Assembly (NCBI GenBank): GCA_002269645.1
Contig: NIVC01003268.1
Coordinates: 44,001 to 108,000 of the forward strand
DNA length: 64,000 nucleotides
From: Macrostomum lignano
Lineage: Eukaryota
Direction: 5' to 3'
Below the pieces are notes generated by a model. That model was not told the origin of the DNA. It saw only the letters and a list, made by a program, of their open reading frames with translations, and ran no database searches. The translations under genes and the position numbers were made by a program. Of this stretch, positions 9,301 to 40,640 are shown piece after piece; positions within the stretch are counted from its first letter, which is position 1; every line of letters begins with the position of its first letter.

Positions 9301-12250
9301 TGCGGCTGCTAGGTGTCAAGCTGTACATTTTCAAATGTTTCGGCAGGTAAGCGAACAGATATTAAGACCTGCTAACTTAGGAATCAGAATTCAGAACTGA
9401 TACAGTTGCATAGTGGCTCCAAGGCGCTGTTTATAGATACCAAATTTGAGTCTCCAGTTGAGTTATTGGTACAGCGGTACTCAAATATTGCCTAAGAATA
9501 GCCTTTTGAAATTCAGAAGCAATCTTCTCAAAAATACGCATTTCTAGCTGTCGTATCGAAAGATTTATGGAGTTCACTCGCTGTTTTATTTTTATCGATT
9601 GACTGACAATACTTCATTGAAACGTGTGCGTTCTTTTAAGTTTAAGCTGCCGGACGGTCAGCTGAGCTGACCATGGACCAACAGCCTTTTCTGGTGGTAA
9701 TTTTTTGTAGTCAATGGTAAAAGAAAAATGATGTAGACGTTCCTGCCGAGCATGGTCAGCAGCACTGAACATTTACGAAAAATGGGTGAAAAACTTATCT
9801 GCAATGGAATGCAGCGACTCGGTTTCAGCATTCTCAGTGATGACATCATCAGTCTCAGAATCGGATGTATGCAAGATTTCTATGGTTGTAGCTGATTCAC
9901 TTATCAATAAAATGATGCACTACTCGTATTAAACCCCGAAAATGCGGTGGCCTGCTCTGCAGGCCATAGCTAATGGTCTATGGCTTGCGAATCATTTGAA
10001 TGCTGTTTCGAAAATAAGTCTGCATAACCGTAGCTTGCGGCTTTGGCCTGCTCAGCAGGACATGCCTATTTTTTATACAGAAAACATTTGTGAATCACAG
10101 TCAACGAGTCTTTCTATCGAGCATTAAGATTCCAGCAATAGTCTATAACTAGCCCAGCTGACCATTTCGGCAGGAACGGAGCTTTTGTATTTCTAGCTCC
10201 GGCGCAAATAGGTTTTAAACACTGCCTTTGTCTTTGACGCATTTTAGCTAAAACCGTTTGTAAATCGATCATGCCATTTAAAAATGGCAACGTTTAAAAG
10301 TAGACAAAGTTGACTTGTAATGTGTCAATCTGTTGCACATCTTATCAAGGACAATTTCTTTTCAGAAAGACATGGCATTTCTGGCTCAATCGTCAAACAA
10401 ATAGTATTTTGCGTACATATGAAGTGAGATTTTGAATTCATTCGAAAGACGTATTTTAAATGCGTGCTCATTTGTATTTTTGTTCTTGTCATTCCTTCGT
10501 AGCCCTGTGCCGTTTAAACAAGTAATTGACGACTTCCAGGACTGCTGTGCTGGCGGAGCCCGCTGACCTGTGGCGACACGTGCAGTGGCGGGTGACATCG
10601 CTGGTTGCTGGGCAGTGCCTCTCCAAGTCCAGCCAAATCACTTCATCATGGAGAATGACACCGCCTGTAAGCGACAGCTGCTACAGTCTGAAGTCCTGCG
10701 CCAGGCTGCAATGCGCCTCTGCTCAACGCACAGCGAACTCTTCCAGTGCGGTTCAACTGCAGCCAGACGGTCGCTGCTTCGTGAAGTTTCAGCAGCGACT
10801 TACTGGCAGAGTGAGTTTTCAGCGAAACTGGACTGAGTACGAGACTGGGTTCGGTGACGGCACTGACTTCTGGATCGGTGAGTGGCTTGTCAATTGATGT
10901 GCGTCAGGAACTGAAGCAGGTCTTATCAACTGCCATAGGAGTGTCATTTAGGCCGTACAATCAATAACGTTCGTTGGTTGGTGGCTGTGGAAATTTTACG
11001 CTCGTAGTTCTTCGGACCGCCCTGCAGCTAAGTGGAAATTTTAGCAAAACTTTTTTTCCTACATCTTTTCCAGCTTTTCGAAACTTGTATGTCTTTATCT
11101 TAAAAATCTGTATTTATATCCTAAGTAAGTAAGTATTCCTCTGTAGGCTCTGCGCTGAATTGGATGTCATGTTACAAACAAGTAATTATTCGTACGACGC
11201 TCGAATCCAACAAACAACAGCAACAACAAAGTACGCTGCCCAGCATGCAAGTCACAGTTAGAGCAGGGCGTGTCAGATGGCGCGTCCCAGATCTTGAGAG
11301 CAGACAAAGTTCGCCCCGTTGGCAGTGTCGAGCTCCCTGGCGTGGCATAGCATGCATTAAATTATTAAGCTGAATAAATGAAAATGTAAAATATAATCAA
11401 ATGCCTTAAAAATTTTAATTAACTGTTAAATAAACCATTCAATTAATTATCTAGAGGCACATTGATATAAAAGATCCAGCAAAGTTGCAAGTAAAAATGA
11501 TTCAAGTTTTTGTGCGACTCAACTTTAAATTTCTAACCCCACTGTCCCAATGCAAATTCTAGCCAAGCTTAAAATCAAAATATGAGGAGATAGGGCAGTC
11601 TGAGTGGAGAAGAGCAGATAAAAGGCCGTACAGCTGAAACATTGCCAGCTTCCAAGTGAGCTGCATCAATAGAATTCATTGGCGCCTCAATCCAGACTGC
11701 CTGGGCAAGTCAGGCCTAAAATTATGGAAAATATATTTTCATCAATTTTGAGTCACGACTCACCTGACAGCAGCGGCGACAAGCCGAGCAGAAGTGACTC
11801 AGACTCAGCCACTCTCCTCCCGCAGGCCTCTCCGCCATCCACTCGCTCAGCCAGGGCGGCGCCACCCTCAGAGTGGAGATGAAGCAGTGGAACGGCTCTG
11901 AGCTGCATGCGGAGTACGCGGGATTCCAGGTGGGAGACGCCAGCACTGGGTATCGGATGACGTACCGAGAGATGCTGAGGGACAGGTCCAGTGTCAGCTG
12001 GGATGCTTTGCAGCTCAGCAAAGGCATGCGGTTCTCCACGATGGACAGGGACAATGACGTATGGGATGCTCAGTCATGCTCAAACACACTCGGAAATGCA
12101 GGCTGGTGGTTTCATTACTGCCGCCACTTCAACCCTAATGGATTTTATCCTTCGCAAGAAAGGATAGATATAATTGGCAATATGGTGTGGTACATTTCTT
12201 ATAGTAAGAAACTGTCTCTTCGTGAAGTGCGGCTGATGCTACAGATTTGA
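6366..12250 (+). pseudogene. Secreted fibrinogen-related (FReD) gene, copy 1: exon 1 6366-~8770 (interrupted by LINE), exon 2 10540-10877, exon 3 11826-12250
   Basis: Signal peptide MQLFQLRVSAALALL.. is split by the LINE. Exon 2 encodes FQQRLTGRVSFQRNWTEYETGFGDGTDFWIG. Exon 3 encodes FSTMDRDND..C..GWWF..C..FNPNG. The exon 1 donor is replaced by CT-rich sequence at ~8770. Confidence 0.88.
6418..7698 (-). mobile_element. 5'-truncated RNase H-bearing non-LTR retrotransposon (I-group-like LINE)
   Basis: ORF 6473-7672 has RNase H (WTDG..AELVAI..SDS..HWVPGHAGIPGNEAVD) and a C-terminal CRFC..ETAAHLLISCP knuckle. There is a (GAA)n tail at 6418-6437 and a 13-bp TSD CTGCTGTTCTGCT at 6405-6417 and 7699-7711. 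Confidence 0.93.
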
Positions 12251-12734
12251 GCATAAGAATTGAGCGACTTGTCGATGTACCCTGTTTATTCAAGTAATTT
12301 TTTATCGGACTTATGCTAAAAATTCTAAAATATTTTGTAGGAGAATAACAAGCATGTTCCTGCAAAATATTAACCGCAAAATACCGATTTTTAAAGTCTC
12401 TTTGATGCAAGAGTTTTACTGAATGAAAACACTCGACAGCTTAAAAACTAAAAACAATATTTTTGCTTGTTTAAACTTAATAAACTCATTTTTATATACT
12501 TAGACTTTTTTCAACAATATGCTAAAAGACAAACCATCCTAACGCAACGCATCTGTGCAACTCAAATACAGAGTTGTTGTTCGCCACTTTTCCTTCACAT
12601 TTTTTGCATTCGAATTTCCTACAAATTGCAAGCTGAAAGCCTCAAGTTTGTTGCTACGAGCGTATGAAGCTTTTCTGAAGTCTTGCTTTTCTGATACTGA
12701 CTGATAATCCCCTATAGATGCCTGTGATTTGAGC

Positions 12735-12995
12735 GCATTTTAAATGGATTTATACACAAGCACATGTGATGAACGGGAGGGAGGAGACTTCAGGTTAGTT
12801 GCCTCACCTGGGTTCGTGTACTGAACCTTTAGCGCTACGGTCCTCCAACCTACTAGCGTACGAAGCAAAAGTCGGTTGAGATCTCGGAACGGCCCAGGCT
12901 CGGCTCGGTCGTCGGCACGGCTCGGTCGTCGGCTCGGCTTCAAGACGAAGATCGCCACTACATTTATACGCGCAGTCTCAAAGCGTTGACCGGGG
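12735..12995 (-). mobile_element. Possible LTR fragment preceding array 2
   Basis: 260-bp segment absent from the equivalent junction at ~30160; TATAAAT-like motifs on the minus strand; lies 3' of the minus-strand Gypsy relic. Confidence 0.35.
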
Positions 12996-13002
12996 AGGGG
13001 CG

Positions 13003-13540
13003 TTGCTGTCTGTTCTATTAGTATTGTGCAGTCTGTTCTATCAGTATTGTGCTGTCTGTTCTATCAGTATTGTGCTGTCTGTTCTATCAGTATTATGCTG
13101 TCTGTTCTATCAGTATTGTGCTGTCTGTTCTATCAGTATTGTGCTGTCTGTTCTATCAGTATTGTGCTGTCTGTTCTATCAGTATTGTGCTGTCTGTTCT
13201 ATCAGTATTGTGCTGTCTGTTCTATCAGTATTGTGCTGTCTGTTCTATCAGTATTGTGCTGTCTGTTCTATCAGTATTGTGCTGTCTGTTCTATCAGTAT
13301 TGTGCTGTCTGTTCTATCAGTATTGTGCTGTCTGTTCTATTAGTATTGTGCTGTCTGTTCTATCAGTATTGTGCTGTCTGTTCTATCAGTATTGTGCTGT
13401 CTGTTCTATCAGTATTGTGCTGTCTGTTCTATCAGTATCGTGCTGTCTGTTCTATCAGTATTGTGCTTTCTGTTCTATTAGTATTGTGCTGTTTGTTCTA
13501 TCAGTATTGTGCTGTCTGTTCTATCAGTATTGTGCTGTTT
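13003..13540. repeat. 23-bp minisatellite array 2 (same unit as array 1)
   Basis: Direct reading. Confidence 0.98.
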
Positions 13541-13559
13541 TTCAGGTTTTTTCAGAGTT

Positions 13560-14850
13560 ATGACATAATTTATGCAAGCAGACGCGCTCCACGGAACTTC
13601 ACTTACCTGTGGGTCATTTCGGAGCCGCACTGAGTTCTCTGAGTCGCAACGCAAGACGCATCGGTCGAGCAAAGTCTTCAGTTTAGAGTTCGCCTGCCAA
13701 GGCCTCATCAGGGCTGCTGAAAACACCGCTTTCAAGACAGGAAGCCCAGCTCGCATTGCTGAGATTAACCCGAGTCCAGCACGCGCTGGTATTGCAAATC
13801 TGACGACTGCTGGCTGGCATCCAACCGCAGAATCACAGGCGAGTTGACGTTTAACAGTTTCACACTTTCACACGCTGCTTCACGTTGGTGAATGATGCCT
13901 TGACAGCCACTCTGTAGTCAAACACGCGCTCCACTTTACGAAGTTCCTGCAGAGGCCGCCAATTTTCAGCAAAGTTGGGAAGAAGTCGCCTTCAGAGGTG
14001 CAAAATCCCCACACCGGTCGAGATCCTTCCTGCTTCTCATAGCTTCTGCATCCTGAATCATCTGCACCAATCCCGGATCCGGCCTTATCCTCTCCTCATC
14101 GATGATGTGGCCCAGGAACTTCAAACTGCTGGCCTTCATAATGCACTTCGCTTTGTTGATTTTCACATTAGCCTCTCTCAGATTGTCCAGCATTTTCTCT
14201 CCGATATTCTAAAGCTCCGCCTTCGACACCGCTCCCACGAGCACATCGTCCTAATGTACGATGACGCTTAGGTTGCTCACCCAGCAGCTTCTTCATCTCG
14301 CGCTAAAACACTGACGAAGACACTTTGATGCCGTACGGCAGCCTGTTAACACGGTAGCAGCCGAAAGGTGTGTTGATGGTGGTGATATTCTTTGACTCAT
14401 TTTTCAGCGGAACCTGGTAGTAAGCGTTAGACAAGTTCACTCGGCATAACAACATCATCTTGTTTGCCGTGTTTGAGAATGCTGTCTCGATTGACGGAAT
14501 CAGATACGTCTGATCCTGCACCCACTTATTGACGACAGTTTAGTCTCTGCAGATCCTCACTGACATCTTGTCGGACTTCATCGTCACTACTATTGGACTG
14601 TCCCACTTTTTAACCGGATCTCGCCAACTGCTCCCTTGATGACCAACAAGCTCTCGTAACTGTTGCTTCTGGACAGCTTGGCTTCATTTGAATGGTGAGC
14701 AGGCAGCGAGCTGAGCAGATCTCAGCTGAGTAACCCAAGTTCTGCTAGTCTTCAATGACGGGCAGCTCCGCCGCAACGAAGCGGCCATCAGGGCCGCCAG
14801 TCTTCACCAGGCACTCCAGCATGCCGAGCTGCTTCATAGCATGCCCGTCG
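13560..14850 (-). mobile_element. Second, internally deleted copy of the Gypsy pol relic
   Basis: Nucleotide and peptide similarity to 3650-4735 (KASSLKFLGHIIDEE; YYQVPL; GCYRVNRLPYGIKVSSSVF); most of RNase H and integrase missing. Confidence 0.9.
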
Positions 14851-14860
14851 CACGCCAGCA

Positions 14861-15109
14861 TTTAGTTTAGTTTAGTTTTGTTTAGTTTTGTTTTGTTTTG
14901 TTTACTGTTTTAAGTTTTGTTTTGCTTTGTTTTGTTTTGTTTTGTTTTGTTTTGTTTTGTTTTGTTTTGTTTTGTTTTGTTTTGTTTTGTTTTGTTTTGT
15001 TTTGTTTTGTTTTGTTTTGTTTTGTTTTGTTTTGTTTTGTTTTGTTTTGTTTTGTTTTGTTTTGTTTTGTTTTGTTTTGTTTTGTTTTGTTTTGTTTTGT
15101 TTTGTTTTG

Positions 15110-15140
<31 letters not shown>

Positions 15141-15680: not shown

Positions 15681-15699
15681 GCACCTGCCGGATCTCTTT

Positions 15700-18308: not shown

Positions 18309-18316
18309 TATATAAA
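18309..18316 (+). promoter_or_regulatory. TATA box of FReD copy 2
   Basis: TATATAAA 80 bp upstream of ATG 18389; conserved in copy 3. Confidence 0.65.
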
Positions 18317-20214
18317 TGCAGCCATTTTACAGAATGCAGCTGCAATCCTCAGATTACCGATACAACAACGAAAGGCGAACTTGACTCGATGCAGCTCTTT
18401 CAGTTGCGAGTTTCTGCAGCGTTGGCTCTGCTACTCTGCTCGCTGGCAGCCGGTCAGGTCTCCCAGTGCGCTCCCGCTGACTCTCCGCGGCTCCGCTTCG
18501 TGGCGCAGCTCAGCGTGAACGGCTGCGCGCTGTTCGTGCACGACACGGGAGCGAGCGACGGTCCGCACTTGGCAGTCGAGCCGCTCATGTGCGTGACGGA
18601 CAGCCTGAGAGGCATTGTTCCCCGATTCGACTTCATCACCCAGCAGCTGTACTTCAGCGTTCCTGTATTGATGAAGGATTCTGGGATGCTTGCAGAGGCT
18701 CAGCGTCAACTGCGGCATCTGTCACCGAGGTCTGTGAGCTTCGCCACGGTGACCAACATCAGCGTCTCAGCCGACACCTGCTCATCGGTTCGGGTTTTGG
18801 GCTTCCTGTGGACTCCGGATGAGTCAGTAGCCACTCTGAGACTCAACTTTGGAGAGAACATTCGATATGAAACTCTACATCCCGAAAACATTGTTCTAAG
18901 ACTTCTGAATATCGACTCAATGAGAAACTTCCTAAATCAAAATACCCAGATGCAGAGTCGAGAAAACAAAGAAAATTCAACAATCGATGCTCTTAAAAGG
19001 GTGAAGCTCTCAGCTACTCTTCTGTCGAATGGTTGTTTCCATGAGGCTCAGAGCCGCGTCATGCTGCAAAACGACAGCTTCATTGATGTCAGCGTGTACA
19101 AGCAAAAATTCTTACCCGCGTGCCGACAGCTGCGGTTCACTCGGTACGTCAATCTCGAGAACTGCTCTGCCCAAGTGCACCAGAGACTCGACATTGAGGG
19201 CCACTTCCTTATCGAGCCTCCGCTGTGCCACAACATCTCCAGCTTGAGCAGCGAGTCAGTCAGGTATGACTACAGCCGAGACATGCACTACCTGAAGCTG
19301 GATCTGGTGCTGCAAGATGAGGCCACACGCGATGCTGTGAGGACTCAGTTGGCCGACTTGTCGCCTCGCTCGGTCGACTTCATGCGGCTGTGGACTGCTG
19401 AGAGATCGGTGAGCTCTTCGTTGAGTGCTCGGTTCGAGGTCGGTCCGCTGATTGCGTCGGCAGACTGGAGGTCCGCTCAGCTGCGGCTGCTCTGCGGAAA
19501 CTGGACGGAGTGCCGCGATCTCAGGTTGGCTGACATTTTGTTATAGGTTGAAACCTTTGAAGACTTTATCTTTCGTTTACCGTGATTTTATATTTTATAC
19601 TTTTGCTTTCAAGCTGCTCTTCTCTAAACACGTCATTATGAGTTTTGTAGTGAGATTAAAAAAACTTTTTAGTATCAGTTTGGAAGAAGAGTAAATTTAA
19701 GTCTGTAAGTTTCAGGTGGCCCGAATTTATGACGTTAAAACACACAAGCACAAATAGCATCGTTTTATAGTTTATAAAATAATTGCATGTTAGCGGCATA
19801 TTTACTATTTACCACATATACCCAAACTATAATATTTTACATTATTTACCATTACTTGCTTTCGACGCCGCTTGCTTGTTTGACTTTATCTATTTATTTA
19901 TTCTTAGCACTGTGCCGTTTACAAAAAACAATTGACGACTTCCAGGGCTGCTGTGCTGGCGGAGCCCGCTGACCTGTGGCGACACGTGCAGTGGCGGGTG
20001 ACTTCGCTGGTTGCTGAGCAGTGCCTCCTAAAGTCCAACCGAATCACTTCATCATGGAGATACAGTCTGAAGATACAGTCAGCTGCTCCAGTCTGAAGTC
20101 TTGCGCCAGGCTGCAATGCGCCTCTGCTCAACGCACAGCGAACTCTTCCAGTGCGTTTCAACTGCAGCCAGACGGTCGCTGCTTCCTGAAGATTCAGCAG
20201 CGACTTACTGGCAG

Positions 20215-22648
20215 GGCTGCGGTTTGCGCTAGGCTTGCCTTGAGCAAACCGGCTTTAGTGCCCAAGTGCGCTGCGTCTGTGGTGCGCCCCCCCCCCGCCG
20301 CGTGTGTACGTTCTGTGTTGTTTAGGTGGGTGCCCACCCCTCCGCCGGTGGGGGGGGGGGTATTTTACTCCAGCCGCGCTGCTGCGTTGGCAGTGTTTTC
20401 GCGCAGTTCAAGAGGTTGCCCGAGGAGAAGGCGAGGAACCTCGCTGAGTTGTTAGCATCTGAAAGGAGCAAAACCAGGATCAGCAAGCGGGCTTTGCAAC
20501 GCTTGATCGGCAAGCTTGGCTGGGCAGCACAGGTGATTCGCAAAGGAAAAACTTTTCTGCGTGATCTGATCGAAGTGTGCAACGCTATGCGGCCTGACGA
20601 GAGAATTAAAGTCAGCTTACAGCTCTGTGACCAATTCTGCTAGTGGATTGTAGCGCTGGAGTCGGCCCGGTGGGTGGAGCTCTGGCCTGTTTTCAAGAAC
20701 CATGTGGCCATCGAGTCCGATGCATGTGGCAGAGGCGGGGCAGCGGTGCTTCGAAGGTCAGATGGCAGTTGGGACTGGTGCTACATCAATTGGAGCCAGG
20801 ATGGGGCCGGAGTGTTCGCTGATCTGCCAATCAACTACAAAGAGGCGGTGGCTCCTTTGCTGTCAATCCTGCGCTGGAGGGAAGAGCTGAAAGGCTGTAA
20901 CGTTAGCGTTTATTGTGACAACATGGCGGCCTGTCATATTATCAATAATGGCACTTCGAGGTGTCCTGTCGTGCAGAGGCTACTGCAAACGATTGCGTTG
21001 ATGTCTTTACGGCATGGTCTGAGTGTGCGAGCCTTTCATGTGCCGGGAGAGTTTCAAATTCTCGCCGATGCAGCGTCTCGGTTGCACGAGCGCAGTCAGT
21101 TGATTATTTTTTATTTCGCTGCTATGGCAACTTGTGCCCGTTTGCTTTGCAATCAATGCATCGACATGCTTTCTGCCCTGCCTCTGCCCACTTTCTTCAT
21201 TTTCAGGCCGTCCAGCTGCGCCAGACTCTCTCAGCCGCCGGGCCGCGTCGCTGCTAGGCGTCTCTTATGCACCACGGTCAAGGCAGGCGGTGGCGAGGCA
21301 CATCCGTGAGTGGCTAGCTTACTGCAAGCAGACCCGCTGCAGTCCTGTATCCTGTCCGCTGAACAGCCTGCTCGACTACCTGGCCAGCCTAGTCGGGACG
21401 CGTTTGCGTGCGTACGGCAGCGTTGCTTCTGTCGCCAGCTGGCTGTCCGTTTGGTTTCGCGTCAACTCTGCACCAGACCTGACGAAGCATGCCGCAACGA
21501 CTCTCCTCCTGCGAGGTGCCAAGCGAGAGCTGGGACTTCGGGTGTCGAGAAAACGACCAGTATCGCCGCTCATGTTGTCGGAGATTCATCAGCGAGTCAG
21601 TCGTTCTGACGGGCTTCAGCTGGCATGCTGGGCAGTCGCCATCTGCTGTTGGTGGGGCATGCTCCGAAAATCCAGCGTGCTACCGACTTCGGGAAAAGGT
21701 CCGGCACGTGTGCGCTGCGCTGACATCTTTCGACACCCGCGAGGTCTGATCTTGCGCCTGGAGCAAGGGAAGACTCTCCAGTTCAAAGAGCGGGTGCACC
21801 AGGTGCTTCTACCAAGGCTAGTGAGGCGGACGTCGCTGTGCCCGGTGTTAGCAATCGAGCAGCACGCAAGATTCAATAATCTGCAATCGGCTGATGCGCC
21901 TCTGTTCACTTATCGCGACGCCGGAGGCAACCAGCGGCTGCTGACAGGCAGGCAGCTCGATCGCTTCCTAGCGGACAAGCTAGGGGCTGCGGGCTTCAGG
22001 CGTGAGCACTTCTCAGCCCACAGCCTCCGCCGTGGCGGCGCGACCTGGGCCTCGGTGTTGGGTGTGCCGGTGCCCGACATCATGCGGATCGGTGACTGGA
22101 AGAGCGACTCAGTGCAGCGGTATCTCCCGCAGTCGCAGCAGGGCTTGGCAGCTTCCGTCGTGTTTGCTAGAGGTGTGGGATCCCTCGTTTGACGTTGGCA
22201 TCAGCTTTACGATGTTCCGTTTCCTTCAATTTTTTCTTTCGCGCGCTTTCCCGTTGTTGTTTCGGCTTTGGAGGCCTCGTTACTGCTTTCGCTTTCGCCA
22301 ACATCGCGTATTCGTGTTTTGCTTTGGGGCACTAAGGCTGCGGTTTGCGCTAGGCTTGCCTTGAGCAAACCGGCTTTAGTGCCCAAGTGCGCTGCGTCTG
22401 TGGTGCGCCCCCCCCGCCGCGTGTGTACGTTCTGTGTTGTTTAGGCGGGCGCCCACCCCTCCGCCGGTGGGGGGGGGGTATTTTACTCCAGCCGCGCTGC
22501 TGCGTTGGCAGTGTTTTCGCGCAGTTCTTTTTTTTTTCTTCTTCTTTTATCCTTATTCTTTTAATCAATAAAATATAAATAAAGAGGCCTCGTTACTGCT
22601 TTCGCTTTCGCCAACATCGCGTATTCGTGTTTTGCTTTGGGGCACTAA
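20215..22648 (+). mobile_element. Ngaro-type tyrosine-recombinase retrotransposon A, internally deleted (no gag or RT core)
   Basis: Split direct repeats A1 20215-20409, B1 22271-22335, A2 22336-22527, B2 22584-22648. RNase H 20326-21309 (ESDA..INYKEA..YCDN..ADAASR, one in-frame TAG). YR ORF 21134-22192 (R..K..HSLRRGGA..GDW.S..Y). No TSD. Confidence 0.93.
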
Positions 22649-23046
22649 AGTGAGTTTTCAGCGAAACTGGACTGAGTACGAGACAGGCTTCGGTGACGGC
22701 ACTGACTTCTGGATCGGTGAGTGGCTTGTCAATTGGTGTGCGTCAGGAACCGAAGCAGGTCTTATCAACTGCCAAACGAGTGTCATTTAGGCCGGACAAT
22801 CAATAACGTTCGCTGGTTGGTGGCTCTATCAATTTTAGTGCCTCCATTTCTCTTAGGCTCTTTGTGAGCCTGGAGTGAAATGGGTGTTAGCCATCCACCC
22901 CTCGCACTGTACATTGTGCCGCCTTTGTGCTCCGTCCTCTCTACCCCCGTGGGGTGGGGGGGGTTTGCTCACCCGCTTATTTATTTGCACGCCGCCTTCT
23001 GTGCCCCGTCGCTCGCTTTGGCTTTGCAGCTCAAAATTTTACCATT

Positions 23047-24111: not shown

Positions 24112-24164
24112 ATCTTTTTTATAGCCGCCCTGCTTTTAACCCCCGTTCGCCGTCACCTTTTATC

Positions 24165-27905: not shown

Positions 27906-27949
27906 CGCAGGTTTGCTGAGAGAGCTGCTGCTGGCTTCATGCACAGTTT

Positions 27950-28550: not shown

Positions 28551-30179
28551 CGCGCTCCTTTGTCAGTGAAACCAAATTGTTTCTGTCAAAGCGCGCTCGT
28601 TTAGTCAACTGCGCGCTCGTGTCCCAAAAAATATTCAGACGACGCGTTTGAGTATTCCGCCAGTTCAACCCTGCAATTATGAATTGGGATGTTGCATTTT
28701 TTATAAGAACGCCACCTCGAATTTTTTAATTGAATGACAGCATTTGCATCCCCAAACAGGACACCAGCCCACGCACGCAGAGCCAAGCACTCCCCCCATC
28801 TGTCCGCGCTCTGTTGGGGGAGAGAGAACGAAACCAAAATGACACTAGCAGGACAAAGGAGTAAAAATTGGTTAGGGACTTGTCGAAGCCATTCACAGAC
28901 CAGCATATACTCGCCTACAATCCTATATACATAAATGATGACCCGCTCTTAAGTATATTCAATGTTGAAACTCTGAGCTTTCAAAGAAAGGGCAGTCTGA
29001 GTAGAGGAGCAAAAAGACCGTCCAGCTGAAATATCACCAGCTTTCAAGTTGGCTGCATAAGCAGAGGTCATTTGCGCATTAATCCAGATTTTCAGCACGA
29101 GACATGTTAAACGCTTAACATAATTTATATGCACTTTTGTTATGCAACACCTTTTGCGTGTTCATCAGCATCCAAATTTCGACTTACCTGGCAGCAGCGG
29201 CGACAAGCCGAGCAGAAGTGACTCAGACTCAGCCGCTGTCCTCCCGCAGGTCTCTCCGCCATCCACTCGCTCAGCCAGGGCGGCGTCACCCTCAGAGAGG
29301 AGATGAAGCTGTGGAACGGCTCTGAGCTGCATGCGGAGTACGCGGGATTCCAGGTGGGAGACGCCAGCACTGGGTATCGGATGACGTACCGAGAGATGCT
29401 AAGGCACAGGTCCAGTGCCACCTTTGACGTTTTGGAGCGCAGCAAAGGCACGCAGTTCTCCACGATGGACAGGGACAACATCAAAGAGAGAAGTCCTTTA
29501 TGCTTCAAGTCTATAGGAAAGAGAGCCTGGTGGTTTGACAGCTGCTACTACTTCAACCCTAATGGACTTTTCCCTACGCGAGAAACAGTAGATTTTAGAT
29601 ATAATAATTTTAGGTATATGAGCTGGCGGCATGGCTCTGCCCGTCTGTCTTTTCGTGAAGTGCGGCTGATGCTGCAGATTTGAGCATCAAAACTTGAGCA
29701 ACTCAGTGGCCCACTCTGTTGACTCAAATACAATTTTTTCGGACTCTAGCTAGCCTGCTGCTACTTAATAATTTTAAAATATTTTTCAAAGTCTCCCTGA
29801 TTGCAAGAGTTTTGCTGACTGAAAAAACTCGTGCGCAAAAAAACTGTGAAACTGTGAAACTTACAACTTTTTGTAAGTTTAAACTTAATAAGCTCATTTT
29901 ACGTGTAAAAGACGCAGACTGTTTTCAACAATCAGCGTATTGAAAAAGGCGAACTATCGTAAGTCTGGAAATCTGTGTAACTCAAACGCAGAGACTTTGT
30001 TCGCAAATTTCTTTTCATCTTTAATTTTTTACACACGAATTTCTCACATATTGAAGCATCAGCTGAAAGCCTCAACGTTGTTGCTACAAGCGCATGAGTT
30101 TTTTCTGAAGTCTTGCTTTTCTGATACTGATAAATTCCCTATAGATGCCTGTGATTTGAGCCTATGTAAAGTGCTGCTT

Positions 30180-31860: not shown

Positions 31861-34037
31861 CGGCACGAAGAAACTATTGACATCGAAACGAAATTTTTTT
31901 CACAGGTGCACATGAAATCAAGTAGAAGTTACTATAACGATAAGAAAAATTTCCTCAACGTGTAATAAACACTTTTTTCGAGTTAATAAGAGTAGCTGTC
32001 ATGATTTCGCACTATATTTTTTTGTTTTAATAGGTTTTTTTACCCGATCTTAGTGTAGAGATATCAAAACCCAGCAGACTACTAGAAGTAAAAGGATAAA
32101 ATTACAAATGCAAACTTAAAAATAGCATGCGCCATACTCAATGTTTATTAATACCAGTAATATGACGAAAACAGCGAGTGACTATTCCTTTTCTATTCAA
32201 AACCTCACCGTTCAAAGGACGACGGTTGTAAAGACTTCACTTAGTTTGTGTGGCAGAAAGATGCTTTTGCGATAGCATGATAAAATCATTCATATATGTA
32301 TTTGTCGAAATGGTATTTTAACCGATCAATAATTTGGGGACTGTAAATAGATATATTAGTCACGTGCACGTACGCACAAAAGAACAAGCGAAGGAGAGAG
32401 TTAAAGAACACGATGGTAAAGTGTACGCAGCAACCCCCAGCATCCCACACAACACAAGCCAAGTCACTACAACGGTCAAATCCATTTCTTGATATCATCA
32501 ATAAAACCGGTTTGGGGCTCAAAGGTCGACTTATATTGGGTATAAATGCAAGTGAAAAATCCGAGCTGAAACCTCAGACTTGGAGCAGCCTCGTGAAGGC
32601 CTCAAGAGATATTGGGCTTTGGTAGAGCAACCAAACGAGGCAATATCTCTGAAGGAGACAAATACCAATTGGTAAGCCTTTGTACGTGTCTGAGGTATTT
32701 GATTATTGAGAGCTGCGTTATTGCCGGCCGTTACTGACCAGTGGAATTCTATTGAGTATTTGAATTTGGGGCCTCCCTATTCCTAAGGGATTGAATAGGA
32801 TCTGCGGACCGATTCCGATACTCTTAGAGGATTATTGGGTGATTTATTTTGATACCCTAGACTCCTAGAGTAACAGATAAGGGCACGCGAATCTAATTCT
32901 GTTATTTCTAGAAGTCGCCCTTTCTAGAGGACCTCGTCATTGTTATCGAGCTGACTTTGTTACTAGGGCACATCTCGGAGTTCTGGACTCGAGGAATACT
33001 TCGACGTCGACGGATTAAGTTGTTACGCTCTCATTCTCGGCCGACTTTAGAATTACGAAGGAAGACCACATAGAGGAGACGAACTCTACAGACCCGACCG
33101 ACAAAGAAGAGGAGCCCGCACCAGTAAGTGATCAATGAATTCTGTTCCCAGGACTGAGGTCTGGAAGTGGGAGTTTACGAGTGACTGATCACCACTCTTA
33201 AACTTTTCATTAAGTTCAATCTTCGTAACAGTGAGTTCAATGCTGTTTATTAATCTTTTTATTACTAAAATACAATAGATATGGCTGGCTTTATGTAATA
33301 AAACATACAAATAATACGATAAACAATCACTACCGAGGGTCCAGACGAGCGCAGTTGCCTTGTTGCCATGCCTTCAAGAGGCCGACGGCGTCACCCTGAT
33401 GACAGACTGAATAAGAGTCTTGCTGAGGAGGTACCAGCCGTTGAGGTTTTCTCATTATTGAGATTCTGACATGGGCGTAAAGGGGTGCATTAAATACGCC
33501 GGCGCCCATGGGAAGAATCCGAAAATCCGGAAAATTTGTTCGGGATGAGAGGAAAATCAGCGTTAAAAGTTTTAATTCTAAAACAACCCCGATATCTAAA
33601 GAAACCGAAACTATCAAAAATTACCTGTATTACCTGAATTACCTGGGCCAATGTACAAGATAATACGGCTTGCGCTGCAGATTGAAGAAATCTAAAAAGA
33701 CAAACTTTGACACAGTTCGCACTGCAGACGAAAAAAAATAAAACGCAAAAATTTTTCGACACGACATGCAGTGTAAACAGAAACTCCTGCAGCAAGGCAG
33801 GTAGAATTGATGCGCTGCATGGCGCAAAGGCTGCGAGTGACGCATGCAGTACCTGAGGATTCCATACACTGTCTGGCAGAGATAAAAGTGCATTTAGTCA
33901 CGGGATTCTGGCCAACCGTATCCCCAGCTGAGGCAAACAGTCTGATGCAAATGGCAAACCGCGTGACGCGTCTGGAATGCAAAGTGCAGCCTGCAGTCAC
34001 GTGAAATTTATGCCATAGGCAGGGAATGCTTCTTCTG

Positions 34038-34045
34038 TATATAAA
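34038..34045 (+). promoter_or_regulatory. TATA box of FReD copy 3
   Basis: TATATAAA 80 bp upstream of ATG 34118. Confidence 0.65.
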
Positions 34046-34117
34046 TGCAGCCATTTTACAGAATGCAGCTGCAATCCTCAGATTACCGATACAACAACGA
34101 AAGGTGAACTTGACTCG

Positions 34118-37100
34118 ATGCAGCTCTTTCAGTTGCGAGTTTCTGCAGCGTTGGCTCTGCTGCTCTGCTCGCTGGCAGCCGGCCAGGTCTCCCAGTGCGC
34201 TCCCGCTGTCTCTCCGAGGCTCCGCTTCGTGGCACAGCTCAGCGTGAACGGCTGCGCGCTGTTCGTGCACGACACGGGAGCGAGCGACGGTCCGCACTTG
34301 GCAGTCGAGCCGCTCATGTGCGTGACGGACAGCCTGAGAGGCATTGTTCCCCGATTCGACTTCATCACCCAGCAGCTGTACTTGAGCGTTCCTGTATTGA
34401 TGAGGGATGCTGGGATGCTCGCAGAGGCTCAGCGTCAACTGCGGCATCTGTCAGCGAGGTCTGTGAGATTCGCCACGGTGACCAACATCAGCGTCTCAGC
34501 CGACACCCGCTCATCGGTTCGGGTTTTGAGCTTCCTGTGGACTCCGGATGAGCCAGTAGCCACCCTGAGACTCGGCTTCAAAAGGATTGTTGTCAAGACC
34601 GATTCAAGTAAAGCTTCAGGTTCAAGAATTTTACAGGAAAGTTTACCTCTCCAGTTCTTTCAATCAGTGTATAACCAGCTGAAGCGCAGTGATGAGTTTG
34701 GAAGCTCACCACAAGAGGCTCTTGAAAAGGTGAAGATATCAGCTTTTATCATTTAAAACGGATCTTGTCATGAGGTTCAGAGCCGCGTCATGCTGCAAAA
34801 CGACAGCTTCATCGAAGTCGGCTTGTACAGGAAAAAATTCTTACCCGTGTGCCGACAGCTGCGGTTCATTCGCTACGTCAAACTCGAGAACTGCTCTGCC
34901 CGAGTGCACCAGAGACTCGACATCAAGGGCCACTTCCTCATCGAGCCTCTGCTGTGCCACAACATCTCCAGCTTGAGCAGCGAGTCAGTCAGGTATGACT
35001 ACAGCCGAGACATGCACTACCTGAAGCTGGATCTGGTGCTGCAAGATGAGGCCACACGCGATGCTGTGAGGACTCAGTTGGCCGACTTGTCGCCTCGCTC
35101 GGTCGATTTCATGCGGCTGTGGACTGCTGAGAGATCGGTGAGCTCTTCGTTGAGTGCTCGGATCGAGGTCGGTCTGCTGATGGCATCGGCAGACTGGAGG
35201 TCCGCTCAGCTGCGGCTGCTCTGCGGAACCTTTACGAAGTGCCGCGATCTCAGGTTGGTCGGAATTTTCTGAGGGGTTTTCAGCTTTTATTGCACCAGAT
35301 TCAAAAAAGAGTTTACTTTCTAGACTCTCTTTACTTCACAGGACTTCTTGAGTGTTTGCAAGAGTAATACAAAATCCCTTTTAGTGTCAGCTTGGTTGCT
35401 ATTGAGCGATCAGATCAGGCTATCAATGCTTTTGTATTGGTTTTTTTTTCTTTTTTAAACTTTTTCGGCGTTCAAAAATGGATTTGACAATATCCAGGTC
35501 TGCTGTGCTGACGGAGCCCGCTGACCTGTGGCGACACGTGCAGTGGCGGGTGACGTCGCTGGTTGCTGAGCAGTGCCACTCCAAGTCCAGCCAAATCACT
35601 TCATCATGGAGAATGAAAGCGTCTGAAGGTGCAGTCAGCTGCTCCAGTCTGAAGTCCTGCGTCAGACTGCACAGCGCCTCTGCTCCACGCACAGCGGCGT
35701 TTCAAATCCTGCCAGACGGTCGCTGCTTCGTGAAGTTTCAGCAGCGACTTACTGGCAGAGTGAGTTTCCAACGAAGCTGGACTGAGTACGAGACTGGCTT
35801 CGGTGACAGCACTGACTTCTGGATTGGTGAGCGGCGTTTGTGTATCAGCTAATATTGTGTGACGGAGGGTTGGTAGCAGATCTTGTTAATCTTATGGTGA
35901 AATTATGGTTGATTCATGCACTTTCAACTGACGTAATACGGACTGAAAGATTAACTGCCCGGCTAAATAAAAAAGTTAAGTTGAAATTGCGCCATGATGG
36001 CAATCGTCAACACTGGCCTTTTCCGCCTGATTGGCGTTTCGGGTCCTTGTTTTTGGTCCTTGGTTTTTTATACAGCTAGGACTATCAATGCCAAATAGTT
36101 TTTTTCAGATGACTAAAATGTCATCCAGGATTCATCAATGAAAAGTATTTGACACTCCGTCCAGACAACGAAAATGTCGAAAAATGGAAGTCCCAAAGCT
36201 ACTTTAAAGCATAAGGCAGTAGACAGCGGTTCAGTCCAGCCAGAGCAGCACCAGCCAGAGCAGCACCAGCTAGAGCAGCACCAGCCAGAGCAGCACCAGC
36301 CAGAGCAGCACCAGCCAGAGCAGCACCAGCCAGAGCAGCACCAGCTTCTACGAGTACAACCATCGTTGCAGTTTTTGCGTATATTTCTATGAAGTTTGCA
36401 TAAAAAACCTTGTTCCCCGACTCAAAACATTAGCTAGTAAATTTTGCGCTGTTCACGTCACGTATAATATTAATGGCCTCATGAGGCCTTATGATAGATA
36501 CATGGCGTACTTAAGAAAGGTTAGAACTTATTGACTTATTAAAAAAATCCAAAAAAAATTCCTTTCGTGCGCGCCCTTCTACGAGATATTTATCTGAGTC
36601 GCAGTCAAGTTTCCGAAGCGATGCATTCAGATGACATTTCGCTTCAGTCCTGGCCTGATACAATTAAAACCCGTCTTGAAGTCTCAGAACAGCCGGCCAC
36701 TCATCTGGGATATCAGAAGACTTTGAATGGATAATTTAGTCAGTAAACGAATTTAGCTGCACCATCTGCTATGGAACGCACATTGTAAAAAATTTATCTC
36801 AGGATCCAAATGACGAATCACCTGACAGCAGCGGCGACTAGCCGAGCAGAAGTGACTCAGACTCAGCCGCTCTCCTCCCGCAGGCCTCTCCGCCATCCAC
36901 TCGCTCAGCCAGGGCGGCGCCACCCTCAGAGTGGAGATGAAGCTGTGGAACGGCTCTGAGCTGCATGCGGAGTACGCTGGATTCCAGGTGGGAGACGCCA
37001 GCACTGGGTATCGGATGACGTACCGAGAGATGCTGAGGGACAGGTTAAATGTCAGCTATGTCGCTTTGGAGAACAGCAAAGGCATGCGGTTCTCTACGAT

Positions 37101-37302
37101 GGACAGGGACAATGACGTACACAGAGGAATCTCATGCTCAAACAGATGGGGAAAAGCAGGCTGGTGGTTTAATGCTTGTCTACACGTCAACCCTAACGGA
37201 CTTTTTCCTTCGCGGGAGACAACAGATGGCAGCTATATCGTCTGGAACTCTGGCTCTGTCTGGCTGCTTCTTCGTGAAGTGCGGCTGATGCTGCAGATTT
37301 GA
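34118..37302 (+). pseudogene. Secreted FReD gene, copy 3: exons 34118-35253, 35498-35826, 36884-37302 (627 aa if the TAA at 34754 is read as sense)
   Basis: Exon lengths 1136+329+419=1884 nt, phases 2 and 1 consistent, GT-AG sites. The only lesion is an in-frame TAA at 34754-34756. Confidence 0.88.
36235..36345. repeat. 15-bp repeat (CCAGAGCAGCACCAG)n, short array
   Basis: Direct reading; lies in intron 2 of copy 3. Confidence 0.95.
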
Positions 37303-37679
37303 GCATCAAAAATTGAGCAACTCAGTGGCGCACCCTGTTGATTCAGATACTGATTTTTTGGACTTAAGCCAAAAATTATTGGGAGACTAACAAGCCTGCT
37401 TCTGCTAGTTATTACCTGCAAAATATGGATTATTACGTCTCCCTGATTGCAAGAGATTTACTGACCGAAAACACTCGAGCGCATAAAAAGTGAAACCAAT
37501 ATTTATACTCAATAAACTCATTTTAATAGACGCAAACTTTATTAATAAGCAAATTATAAAAGGCTGAATACTTCAACTAAAAAATCTGAGCAGCTACTCA
37601 CTTTATTCATACGGCCAAATGTTCGAGAATTTCTTTTTAAATTCGTTTTTTACACTGGAATTTTAGTAATGATTTTTTA

Positions 37680-38060
37680 TGAGCACCAGCCAGAGCAGCA
37701 CCAGCCAGAGCAGCACCAGTCAGAGCAGCACCAGCCAGAGCAGCACCAGCCAGAGCAGCACCAGCCAGAGCAGCACCAGCCAGAGAAGCACCAGCCAGAG
37801 CAGCACCAGCCAGAGCAGCACCAGCCAGAGCAGCACCAGCCAGAGCAGCACCAGCCAGAGCAGCACCAGCCAGAGCAGCACCAGCCAGAGCAGCACCAGC
37901 CAGAGCAGCACCAGCCAGAGCAGCACCAGCCAGAGAAGCACCAGCCAGAGCAGCACCAGCCAGAGCAGCACCAGCCAGAGAAGCACCAGCCAGAGCAGCA
38001 CCAACCAGAGAAGCACCAGCCAGAGCAGCACCAGCCAGAGCAGCACCAGCCAGAGCAGCA
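37680..38060. repeat. 15-bp repeat (CCAGAGCAGCACCAG)n, long array
   Basis: Direct reading; QPEQH, SSTSQ and WLVLL ORFs are artefacts. Confidence 0.96.
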
Positions 38061-38344
38061 GCAGTCGTGGCAGCACCGGCCGACTCAGTTCTTCAGCTGA
38101 TGCTTGCAACTGACTGACTCATAAATTAATTTTGTCTTAGACTTCTCCTTACTTCTTCTTTACCTTAGATTTTTTCATTTAGTCAAGTTTGCGAACAGAA
38201 GTATTTAGATGACATTTCGCTTCAGTACTGACCTGATACAATTAAAAACCCGTCTTGCAATCTCGGAACATCCGGCCACTCAGCTGGGATATCAGAAGGT
38301 TTAAAATGGATAGTTTAGGCAATTAACAAATTTTAATTTAGGCA

Positions 38345-38665
38345 ATCCAGGTAGGAGACGCCAGCACTGGGTATCGGATGACGTACCGAGAGATGCTGAC
38401 GGACAGGTCCAGTGTCAGCTGGGATGCTTTGGAGCTCAGCAAAGACATGCGGTTCTCCACGATGGACAGGGACAATGACGTATGGGATGCTGGTTCATGC
38501 TCCAATAAATATGGAAAAGGAGGCTGGTGGCTTAAACGCTGCCATCAATTCAACCCTAACTGACTTTATCCTTCAGGGGATTTAGCACATCACAGGAATA
38601 CGGTCAGGCACTCTGGCTCTGCCTATCGAACTTTTCGTGAAATGAGGCTGATGCTGCAGAGTTGA
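38345..38665 (+). pseudogene. Orphan 5'-deleted fourth copy of the FReD terminal exon
   Basis: QVGDASTGYRMTYREM..FSTMDRDND..GGWW..C..FNPN* ..REMRLMLQS; lacks the splice acceptor; in-frame TGA. Confidence 0.85.

Positions 38666-40034: not shown

Positions 40035-40640
<606 letters not shown>

What the first reader, a model, noticed from the sequence alone, without database searches (positions are those of the whole stretch)
11826..38665. Four FReD terminal exons with conserved framework but hypervariable ligand-binding subdomain
All copies share HAEYAGFQVGDASTGYRMTYREM and REVRLMLQI. Between FSTMDRDN and the end they differ strongly: DVWDAQSCSNTLGNAGWWFHYCRHF; IKERSPLCFKSIGKRAWWFDSCYYF; DVHRGISCSNRWGKAGWWFNACLHV; DVWDAGSCSNKYGKGGWWLKRCHQF. 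In ficolins and tachylectin-5 this P-subdomain binds calcium and acetylated ligands. The pattern suggests a diversifying pattern-recognition family, analogous to but architecturally different from snail IgSF-FREPs.
Basis: partly seen in the sequence, partly recalled or inferred. Interest (0 to 1): 0.78.

Follow-up and report, generated by a model that had tools for sequence, protein, structure and literature searches.

The report
Flatworm fibrinogen-type lectin gene array, decaying copy
The four segments are the last exons of tandem copies of a Macrostomum flatworm gene family for secreted fibrinogen-domain (lectin-like) proteins whose predicted ligand pocket varies strongly between copies; in this window every copy is broken, and intact twins exist elsewhere in the genome.

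Summary
The window is Macrostomum lignano DNA and holds a tandem array of three full genes plus one fragment of a genus-specific family. Each gene encodes a signal peptide, two copies of a ~165-aa repeat with no Pfam or PDB match, and a fibrinogen-related domain (FReD). The flagged segments are exon 3 of copies 1-3. The fourth is a 5'-truncated pseudo-exon with an internal stop.

Paralogues are 95-100% identical over most of the gene, synonymous sites included. The P-subdomain diverges as fast as the 3'UTR. Its variable positions coincide with the Ca2+ loop and the S1 pocket residues of FIBCD1, TL5A and the ficolins.

A site model on the variable part alone finds about 25% of codons at omega about 2.6-2.9 (2dlnL 14.5). 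None of 56 null simulations reached that value. Pairwise counts show only dN about equal to dS, so diversifying selection is suggested, not proven.

All three full copies here carry disabling lesions. Counterpart contigs 95-97% identical are intact where readable.

Published expression is mixed (non-specific, tail, testis region, up in grouped worms), so an immune role is untested and a reproductive role is a live rival.

The parts
6366..6417 (+). Copy 1, exon 1, 5' piece (start Met and first part of the signal peptide), cut off by an insertion
   Evidence: Met found at 6366. Collinear with intact L002 copy 1'.
6418..7698 (-). 1281-bp GC-rich LINE-like insertion inside copy 1 exon 1. It has 13-bp target-site duplications CTGCTGTTCTGCT at 6405-6417 and 7699-7711, a (TTC)n end, and an RNase H ORF on the - strand.
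   Evidence: Junctions compared with L002, which lacks the insert. Pfam RNase_H E=1.4e-12. GC 0.67.
7699..8770 (+). Copy 1, rest of exon 1 (the two N-terminal repeats). The last 32 nt and the splice donor are lost through a 1.36-kb deletion relative to L002.
   Evidence: L002 11145-12504 is absent here; CTCT microhomology at the junction.
10540..10877 (+). Copy 1, exon 2 (linker plus start of the FReD)
   Evidence: Acceptor ..CTTCCAG| and donor G|GTGAGT. Junctions match annotated protein P0004.
11826..12250 (+). Copy 1, exon 3 (terminal; FReD B/P subdomains). The hypervariable part is 12056-12217.
   Evidence: Pfam E=1.6e-36 for exons 2+3. AATAAA at 12479.
18389..19524 (+). Copy 2, exon 1, open reading frame intact
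19946..20214 (+). Copy 2, exon 2, 5' piece. It is 4 nt shorter than L002 copy 2' near 20056-20075, which shifts the frame.
20215..22648 (+). DIRS-like retroelement fragment inserted in copy 2 exon 2. It has 195-bp terminal direct repeats at 20215-20409 and 22336-22527.
   Evidence: Self-BLAST. Weak Pfam hits, below the curated cut-offs, to RT_RNaseH and Phage_integrase. Absent from L002.
22649..22716 (+). Copy 2, exon 2, 3' piece
29250..29683 (+). Copy 2, exon 3 (terminal). The hypervariable part is 29480-29650. The third Asp of the Ca2+ motif is replaced (DRDNI), and there is no AATAAA within 800 nt.
34118..35253 (+). Copy 3, exon 1, with an in-frame TAA at 34754-34756 where the counterpart protein P0001 has Ser
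35498..35826 (+). Copy 3, exon 2
36884..37302 (+). Copy 3, exon 3 (terminal). The hypervariable part is 37114-37269.
   Evidence: AATAAA at 37511.
38342..38665 (+). Copy 4: a 5'-truncated exon-3 fragment with an internal TGA at 38561-38563. It is a pseudogene fragment shared with L001.
11755..11825 (+). Last ~70 nt of intron 2, 74-99% identical between paralogues although the rest of the intron is unalignable. The same holds at 29180-29249 and 36813-36883.
   Evidence: Read as part of the gene-conversion tract or as a conserved splicing element.
13004..13538 (.). 23-bp minisatellite that follows each gene unit (also at 1-1793 and 30181-31028)
   Evidence: Also present in L002.

Best explanation
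Window 3.5-39 kb is one subgenomic copy of a tandem array of a Macrostomum-specific gene family.

**Gene and protein.** Each gene has three exons. It encodes a secreted protein made of a signal peptide, two copies of a ~165-aa alpha/beta repeat of unknown fold separated by a variable helical insert, a linker, and a C-terminal fibrinogen-related domain. The four flagged segments are the last exon, which encodes the end of the B-subdomain and the whole P-subdomain.

**Evolution (shown).**
- Paralogues are kept nearly identical over most of their length, at synonymous sites and in the last ~70 nt of intron 2 as well. The most likely cause is gene conversion between tandem and dispersed copies.
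- Two patches escape this: the insert between the repeats, and the P-subdomain.
- In the P-subdomain the scaffold residues (FSTMDxDND, Cys...GWWF..Cys, NPNG) stay fixed.
- The Ca2+-loop side chains and the residues that line the S1 ligand pocket in FIBCD1, TL5A and the ficolins change freely.

**Mechanism (inferred).** The family is a germline-encoded repertoire of lectin-like binding heads with different ligand specificities, mounted on a common stalk. It is maintained by birth-and-death evolution, with some positive selection on pocket residues. The canonical acetyl pocket is not kept, so most members probably do not bind N-acetyl groups in the ficolin manner.

**This window (shown).** All three full-length copies are disabled and the fourth is a fragment.
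- Copy 1 has a LINE-like insertion and a deletion.
- Copy 2 has a frameshift and a DIRS-like insertion.
- Copy 3 has a nonsense codon.
- In the paralogous blocks of the public assembly, copies 1' and 3' are intact throughout, and copy 2' is intact over exons 1-2, the only part held.
- This array is therefore a decaying duplicate in a neopolyploid genome.

The biological role (defence or reproduction) is not shown.
For: **Organism and family.**
- One search returned 22 hits. The 21 that carry a source name are all M. lignano, and all 22 carry PF00147. The best is 96% identical over 100% of the query.
- L001 and L002 are collinear with the window at 95-97% identity.
- The M. lignano genome consists of three paralogous copies with about 2.2% SNP divergence and many indels (PMC10733133).

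**Gene model.** GT-AG junctions agree with the annotated proteins P0001 and P0004.

**FReD.** Pfam E=1.6e-36. PDB hits at E 2e-25 and weaker.

**N-terminal repeat.**
- No Pfam hit.
- Only 13 hits among 1.84e9 representatives. Eleven are named M. lignano and two, from Logan and JGI, carry no name.
- Two copies in FReD proteins and six in secreted proteins that end in a C-type lectin domain.
- AF2 model pLDDT 94.3, with no PDB match (best E 0.14, TM at most 0.26).

**Mosaic evolution.**
- dS is 0.03-0.09 in the framework and 0.2-1.0 in the variable parts.
- Identity profile: intron 45-60%, intron tail 74-99%, framework 95-99%, variable parts 62-74%, 3'UTR 58-76%.
- Fisher tests on synonymous differences.
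- Nearest neighbours shift along the CDS, and L005 is a clear mosaic.

**Selection.**
- Variable-partition M2a versus M1a gives 2dlnL 14.5 (27% of codons at omega 2.6), 7.8 without the pseudogenes, 10.9 for V1 alone and 11.1 for gap-free columns.
- The null simulations reach at most 6.1 in 56 replicates.
- About 45% of variable-part codons are at omega 0.1-0.2, so the fold is under constraint.

**Pocket mapping.** FIBCD1 residues from PMC3908420, placed by spacing from the conserved Asp and Cys landmarks.

**Lesions.**

**The variability predates the lesions.** Copies 1 and 3 differ from their intact counterparts by 4 and 1 amino acids in exon 3.
Against: - Pairwise counts give dN about equal to dS in the variable part (pN 0.26-0.46, pS 0.25-0.44).
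- An a-priori set of 13 pocket and Ca-loop codons has twice the pN of the rest but also a higher pS (omega 0.25-0.94). Positive selection therefore rests on the site model alone.
- That model used 7-10 sequences, a tree length of 8-10 substitutions per codon, an uncertain alignment after NPNG, and a family in which recombination is evident.
- Gene conversion is inferred from patterns and not demonstrated tract by tract. Strong nucleotide-level constraint could contribute.
- No binding, oligomerisation or expression-site data exist for any member.
- The published orthogroup annotation (tail, testes, non-specific; up in grouped worms) does not point to defence.
- The small lesions (4-nt deletion, TAA) could be assembly errors. 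The two transposon insertions and the 1.36-kb deletion are unlikely to be.
Confidence: 0.6

Rival explanations
1. The variability is pseudogene decay. The copies in the window are dead genes, and their P-subdomains drift neutrally.
For: - All three full copies carry disabling lesions and copy 4 is a fragment.
- Copy 2 has lost a Ca2+-binding Asp and its AATAAA, and it shows the highest dN.
- The variable part diverges at about the 3'UTR rate.
Against: - The same P-subdomain sequences occur in intact annotated counterparts: P0004 for copy 1 and P0001 for copy 3, with 4 and 1 amino-acid differences in exon 3. The paralogue differences therefore predate the lesions.
- About 45% of variable-part codons are at omega 0.1-0.2, and the Cys, GWWF and NPNG scaffold is fixed.
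- Decay would not spare the framework.
- The LRT stays positive without the pseudogenes (2dlnL 7.8).
Confidence: 0.1
2. The contrast is produced only by gene conversion. The framework is homogenised, and the P-subdomain merely keeps old, neutral divergence because conversion tracts stop there. Variation is not selected for.
For: - Framework dS is about ten times lower than variable-part dS.
- The intron tail is homogenised too.
- The CDS is a mosaic.
- dN is about equal to dS in pairwise counts.
Against: - Neutrality of the whole patch is contradicted by strongly constrained scaffold codons interleaved with the variable ones.
- The site model rejects the model with omega at most 1.
- Variable positions cluster on predicted pocket residues rather than at random.
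- Why conversion should stop at exactly the two surface patches needs selection against homogenisation.
Confidence: 0.25
3. The family is reproduction-related rather than immune, for example seminal-fluid, sperm or female-tract interaction proteins. In that case the fast-evolving pocket reflects sexual selection or conflict.
For: - Orthogroup OG0000014 (73 genes in M. lignano, M. hystrix and M. spirale) carries the positional classes Non-Specific, Tail and Testes.
- At least one member is up-regulated in octets versus isolated worms (PMC7336406, Tables S1 and S5).
Against: - The annotation is mixed and at orthogroup level.
- No ISH pattern and no germline or neoblast FACS annotation is recorded.
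- Many members are 'Non-Specific'.
- FReD and C-type lectin heads on a shared stalk resemble humoral lectins.
Confidence: 0.3

Closest known systems
Ficolins, tachylectin-5A and FIBCD1 (FReD lectins with Ca2+ site and S1 acetyl pocket)
   Same: - Same C-terminal FReD fold family (Pfam PF00147; PDB hits to ficolin-1, -2, -3 and FIBCD1).
- The D-x-D Ca2+ motif, the Cys-Cys bridge between the Ca site and the pocket, GWW and NPNG are conserved.
- The proteins are secreted.
   Different: - There is no collagen-like stalk or coiled coil. Two novel ~165-aa repeats take its place.
- The Pfam match starts at profile position 35, so the A-subdomain is atypical and lacks GGGW.
- The acetyl-pocket residues are not conserved: the Ala432 equivalent is Met, and the His415 and Tyr405 equivalents vary.
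Biomphalaria FREPs and other expanded invertebrate FReD families (bivalves, mosquitoes, amphioxus, ticks)
   Same: A lineage-specific expansion of FReD genes with sequence diversity concentrated in part of the molecule, in tandem arrays, with signs of gene conversion. The comparison with those families rests on my own knowledge. Ixoderins and shrimp FREPs appeared among the search results.
   Different: - No IgSF domain.
- The diversity here is germline variation between paralogues. Nothing suggests somatic diversification.
- A second hypervariable patch lies in the N-terminal stalk.
- The family is restricted to Macrostomum.
Collectin/ficolin pairing in vertebrates (one stalk type, two lectin heads)
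   Same: The same N-terminal repeat module is joined either to a FReD (two repeats) or to a C-type lectin domain (six repeats) in secreted M. lignano proteins.
   Different: The stalk is not collagen. Its fold has no solved relative. Oligomerisation and effector recruitment are unknown.

Membership tests
Fibrinogen-related domain (Pfam PF00147 Fibrinogen_C) | Match to the family HMM above the curated cut-off | tested here: met
   Copy 1 exons 2+3 score 126.7 bits, E=1.6e-36 (cut-off 22). Copy 3 scores 126 bits. Copy 2 exon 3 alone scores 68 bits. PDB FReDs match at E 2e-25 to 1e-15.
Fibrinogen-related domain | P-subdomain disulfide (Cys401-Cys414 of FIBCD1) and the GWW / NxNG scaffold | tested here: met
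   Both Cys, GWWF and NPNG are present in copies 1-3. Copy 4 reads GWWL and has NPN followed by a TGA. Across the family these are invariant or nearly so. Paralogue L004 has Tyr in place of the second Cys.
Ca2+-dependent FReD lectins (ficolin / TL5A / FIBCD1 type) | Ca2+ site Asp393 / Asp395 equivalents (D-x-D) | tested here: met
   DRDND is present in copies 1, 3 and 4 and in most paralogues. Copy 2 has DRDNI, and P0002 also lacks the motif.
Acetyl-group-binding FReD lectins (S1 site of TL5A, M-ficolin, FIBCD1) | Conserved pocket Tyr405, His415, Tyr431, Ala432, Trp/Tyr443 | tested here: not met
   Mapped by spacing from the conserved Cys and Asp landmarks.
- Tyr405 equivalent: L/I/W/Y/F/C.
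- His415 equivalent: R/Y/L/H/P/M/N.
- Ala432 equivalent: Met in most, Ile in copy 3, Thr in copy 4.
- Trp443 equivalent: W/Y in most, but K or R in copies 1 and 2.
. The mapping is sequence-based and has not been checked on a structure.
Snail FREPs | One or two N-terminal IgSF domains upstream of the FReD | tested here: not met
   No Ig or any other Pfam domain in the 379-aa N-terminal part. It consists of two copies of a repeat with an alpha/beta AF2 model and no PDB match.
Ficolins | Collagen-like Gly-X-Y stalk | tested here: not met
   No Gly-X-Y run in any family protein (sequences). No Collagen Pfam hit.
Diversifying immune recognition family | Excess of non-synonymous change at binding-site codons | tested here: inconclusive
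   The site model on the variable partition is significant (2dlnL 14.5, 7.8, 10.9 and 11.1 in four data sets; 0 of 56 null replicates reached 14.5). NG86 pairwise omega is 0.25-0.94 for the a-priori pocket codons and 0.4-2.6 for the region.
Diversifying immune recognition family | Expression in immune or barrier tissues and induction by microbes; binding to microbial ligands | not testable with these tools
   Only an orthogroup-level annotation exists: Non-Specific, Tail and Testes, plus OvI_up (PMC7336406).

The most novel reading that the evidence does not exclude
Macrostomum has built its own counterpart of the vertebrate collectin/ficolin system. In this reading a lineage-specific repeat domain of a so far unseen fold serves as a common stalk for two unrelated lectin heads, FReD (two repeats) and C-type lectin (six repeats). 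The FReD branch is then a germline repertoire whose pocket residues and a stalk insert are kept diverse against pervasive gene conversion. Truncated copies such as copy 4 might serve as sequence donors.
Probability: 0.2. Interest if true: 0.75.

Novelty: new variant of a known kind. Interest (0 to 1): 0.5.

Why it matters
Expanded FReD families with variable binding sites are a recurring invertebrate answer to recognition problems. None has been described in a free-living flatworm, and no paper found in the searches treats this family.

- M. lignano is transgenic-ready and RNAi-tractable, so a germline repertoire of lectin heads with about 20 or more members could be tested for function directly.
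- The N-terminal repeat gives a confident model with no solved relative, and it is shared with C-type lectin proteins. That makes it a candidate new domain family.
- The locus shows how gene conversion, patch-wise escape from it and post-polyploidy gene loss act together. One array is decaying while its paralogous copies remain intact.

Tried and rejected
- **Whole-exon site model.** It gave 2dlnL 86. I rejected this as evidence because the framework has about ten times lower dS, which violates the constant-synonymous-rate and single-tree assumptions. I redid the test on the variable partition alone.
- **First bootstrap.** The parametric bootstrap timed out and was rerun single-threaded.
- **Full-length AF2 model.** P0004 with 13 sequences was poor (pLDDT 57) and was not used for fold search or site mapping.
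- **DNA for three more paralogues.** P0002, P0003 and P0008 are not on record.
- **Literature.** Searches for Macrostomum with fibrinogen, ficolin or the gene IDs in main texts found nothing relevant. The IDs were also absent from the supplements of PMC5816591 and PMC12896417.
- **UniProt models as evidence of transcription.** I considered that P0007, P0013 and P0015 prove transcription of the window copies. I rejected this. They skip the stop or change frame, which looks like gene-prediction workarounds. P0015 joins copy 3, the 15-bp repeat and copy 4.
- **Chance.** Chance similarity and simple pseudogene drift as the source of the pattern are rejected, as set out under the rival explanations.

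Full report
**1. What is in the sequence**

Stop-free stretches around them are 11798-12250, 29222-29683, 36856-37302 and 38342-38563.

The first three are preceded by an identical polypyrimidine tract and AG (...CTCCTCCCGCAG|G). Copies 1 and 3 have AATAAA 229 and 209 nt after the stop.

The fourth segment is different. So the window holds three complete terminal exons and one truncated pseudo-exon. The statement that all copies share both framework peptides holds for three of the four.

**2. Source and gene structure**

A protein search with the conceptual product of copy 3 returned 22 proteins. The 21 that carry a source name are all from Macrostomum lignano, and all 22 carry PF00147. The best is 96% identical over its full length.

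Self-comparison shows a tandem segmental duplication (units at about 3566-13538, 13805-31031 and 33229-37543, plus a fragment at 38181-39085). Each unit is followed by a 23-bp minisatellite.

Each unit is a three-exon gene with GT-AG introns. The junctions agree with the annotated proteins P0001 and P0004.
- Exon 1 encodes a signal-peptide-like N-terminus (MQLFQLRVSAALALLLCSLAAGQ) and about 355 aa without any Pfam match.
- Exon 2 encodes a linker and the start of the FReD.
- Exon 3 encodes the rest of the FReD.

Pfam Fibrinogen_C matches at E=1.6e-36. Solved FReDs (fibrinogen alphaE C, angiopoietin-2, ficolin-1, -2 and -3, FIBCD1, tenascin) match at E 2e-25 to 1e-15.

**3. The N-terminal part**

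It consists of two copies of a repeat of about 165 aa.
- A search of 1.84 billion representative proteins found only 13 relatives. Eleven are named M. lignano; two, from Logan and JGI, carry no name.
- Some relatives are secreted proteins of 1285-1462 aa with six repeats and a C-terminal C-type lectin domain.
- An AF2 model of one repeat, built from 29 diverse repeat units, is confident (pLDDT 94.3, pTM 0.85).
- The model has no match among PDB structures (best E 0.14, TM at most 0.26).

The architecture is therefore unlike snail IgSF-FREPs and unlike ficolins.

**4. The copies in this window are broken**

The window is collinear with contigs of the public assembly GCA_002269645.1 at 95-97% identity: L002 for window 1-29251, and L001 for window 30840-47330.
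- **Copy 1.** It carries a 1281-bp LINE-like insertion in the signal-peptide region (6418-7698; 13-bp target-site duplication; RNase H ORF on the - strand). A 1.36-kb deletion also removes the last 32 nt of exon 1 and its donor.
- **Copy 2.** It has a 4-nt deficit in exon 2 that shifts the frame, and a 2.4-kb DIRS-like insertion in the same exon (20215-22648).
- **Copy 3.** It has TAA at 34754-34756 where P0001 has Ser.

These lesions are documented. The counterparts are intact: P0004 for copy 1, P0001 for copy 3, and exons 1-2 of copy 2' (L002 ends inside its exon 3). Copy 4 is the same fragment in L001.

The published analysis of this genome describes three paralogous copies of most regions, with about 2.2% SNP divergence and many indels (PMC10733133). 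That fits. The window is one paralogous block in which the array is decaying.

**5. Is the P-subdomain hypervariable, and why**

*Divergence profile.*
- Among close paralogues, the first 49 codons of exon 3 have dS 0.03-0.09 and dN 0.01-0.05.
- The 25 codons after FSTMDRDN have dS 0.17-1.06 and dN 0.19-0.77.
- The stretch after NPNG has dS 0.13-0.88 and dN 0.27-0.79.
- Mean nucleotide identity is 45-60% in intron 2, 74-99% in its last ~70 nt, and 95-99% in the framework. It is 62-74% in the variable parts, 94% over LREVRLMLQI, and 58-76% in the 3'UTR.
- Synonymous differences are significantly fewer in the framework in all ten pairs, at p between 3e-4 and 5e-2.

*Whole coding sequence.* Paralogues differ by 0-5% along most of the coding sequence. 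The two exceptions are the insert between the repeats (18-68%) and the P-subdomain (16-31%). Nearest neighbours change along the gene, and L005 is a clear mosaic.

*Reading.* Most of the gene is homogenised, most simply by gene conversion, and two patches escape. The variable part is therefore 'hyper'variable relative to a homogenised background. Its absolute rate is about the neutral one.

**6. Selection**

A site model on the whole exon gave 2dlnL 86, but the heterogeneity in dS confounds it. The variable partition was therefore tested alone, with its own tree.

| Data set | M2a versus M1a, 2dlnL |
|---|---|
| Variable partition, 10 sequences | 14.5 |
| Variable partition, 7 putatively intact sequences | 7.8 |
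| First variable stretch alone (25 codons) | 10.9 |
| Gap-free columns | 11.1 |
| Framework partition | 0 (omega 0.2) |

- In the 10-sequence run, M0 omega is 0.72. M2a puts 44% of codons at omega 0.18, 29% at 1 and 27% at 2.6.
- Fifty-six data sets simulated under M1a reached at most 6.1, with a 95th percentile of 5.8.
- Against this, pN is about equal to pS in the variable part.
- A pocket and Ca-loop codon set defined from FIBCD1 has twice the pN of the rest (0.46-0.49 against 0.24-0.27). Its pS is also higher, which gives omega 0.25-0.94.

I conclude that constraint on the scaffold is shown, that concentration of replacements at predicted contact positions is shown, and that positive selection is suggested but not secured.

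**7. Mapping to known binding sites**

In FIBCD1, Ca2+ is held by Asp393, Asp395 and the carbonyls of Ser397 and Asn399. The Cys401-Cys414 bridge links the Ca site to the S1 pocket. Tyr405, His415, Tyr431, Ala432 and Trp443 form the acetyl pocket (PMC3908420).

I placed the equivalents here by spacing from the conserved Asp and Cys residues.
- The stretch VWDAQ corresponds to residues 396-400.
- The residue four after the first Cys corresponds to Tyr405.
- The residues flanking the second Cys correspond to Asn413 and His415.
- The Tyr of the consensus YM (NM in copy 1, YI in copy 3) corresponds to Tyr431, and the residue after it to Ala432.
- W/Y near the C-terminus corresponds to Trp443.

The sites with posterior above 0.9 in the site models fall on or next to these positions. 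Because Ala432 is replaced by Met and the Tyr405 and His415 equivalents vary, the canonical acetyl pocket is not retained. Copy 2 also lacks the Asp395 equivalent.

**8. Function**

No paper found in the searches describes this family.

In Brand et al. 2020 the family is OrthoFinder group OG0000014 (PMC7336406).
- It holds 73 genes from M. lignano, M. hystrix and M. spirale, and none from M. pusillum.
- Its positional classes are Non-Specific, Tail and Testes.
- Its social signal is up in octets versus isolated worms.
- No ISH pattern and no germline or neoblast FACS annotation is recorded.

The family is thus expressed and genus-restricted. The data do not favour defence over reproduction.

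**9. Verdict**

- The family is a new variant of a known kind: an expanded FReD lectin-like family on a novel stalk, in a flatworm.
- The proteins are already in databases as uncharacterised.
- The diversifying-selection claim is partly supported.
- The immune claim is untested.
- The particular copies in this window are pseudogenes.

Noticed in passing
window ~53000-64000 (runs off the window end): A Polinton/Maverick-like element.
- ORFs resembling protein-primed DNA polymerase B lie at 60557-63266 on the - strand (weak Pfam DNA_pol_B_2).
- A double-jelly-roll capsid-like ORF lies at 54344-55630 on the - strand (weak DJR-like_dom).
- An ORF with a P-loop motif GSGKT lies at 57484-58286 on the + strand, and a short Cys-protease-like ORF at 59936-60205 on the - strand. 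Neither has a Pfam hit; I read them by eye as a packaging ATPase and an adenain-like protease.
- A 336-bp piece (54022-54357) is 94% identical to L003 2046-2379, next to FReD gene fragments.

The element was searched piece by piece only, and was neither assembled nor printed.
   Followed up: partly
window 22891-27000 (+), inside intron 2 of copy 2: A DIRS-like retroelement with SAP-domain, reverse transcriptase and tyrosine-recombinase (Phage_int_SAM) ORFs. It is absent from the counterpart contig L002.
   Followed up: partly
window 1864-4491 (-), with a diverged copy at 13805-15136: A Ty3/gypsy-like pol fragment (RT_RNaseH, Integrase_H2C2, rve) sits upstream of copy 1. A 78-83% identical remnant sits upstream of copy 2, so it was part of the duplicated unit.
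   Followed up: partly
window 8120-8317, 18860-19000, 34578-34769 (exon 1 of copies 1-3): A second hypervariable patch lies in the insert between the two N-terminal repeats. Its length differs and it is 18-68% divergent between paralogues, so it is essentially unalignable in some pairs, while the flanks are 0-5% divergent. Copy 3's stop codon lies at its edge.
   Followed up: partly
proteins P0024, P0026, P0032, P0033 (M. lignano; not in the window): The ~165-aa N-terminal repeat occurs six times in secreted proteins that end in a C-type lectin domain. Its AF2 model (pLDDT 94) has no PDB match. It is a candidate new domain family.
   Followed up: yes
window 11755-11825, 29180-29249, 36813-36883: The last ~70 nt of intron 2 are 74-99% identical between paralogues although the rest of the intron cannot be aligned. 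This could be a conversion tract or a conserved splicing or regulatory element. It is unexplained.
   Followed up: no
window 36236-36345 and 37682-38064: The 15-bp repeat AGCACCAGCCAGAGC lies in intron 2 of copy 3 and between copies 3 and 4. The UniProt model P0015 reads through it (QPEQH repeats) and joins copy 3 to copy 4, which is probably a gene-prediction artefact.
   Followed up: partly
window 43161-43547 (-): An exon encoding the catalytic core of a 3',5'-cyclic nucleotide phosphodiesterase (PDEase_I, E=6e-42). It belongs to a neighbouring gene that is conserved with L001.
   Followed up: no
window 1-1793, 13004-13538, 30181-31028; also 14861-15679, 27955-28551, 40037-40643, 48170-48937, 51923-52748: Tandem repeats are abundant. 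A 23-bp minisatellite follows each gene unit and is also present in L002. There are also (TTTTG)n, 67-bp, (ACAG)n, 55-bp and 177-bp arrays.
   Followed up: no
L005 12727-13065 and L004 14741-15154: Other family members also show possible loss of function. P0010 (L005) ends prematurely after NPNAVFPSREK, and P0006 (L004) has Tyr in place of the second pocket Cys.
   Followed up: no
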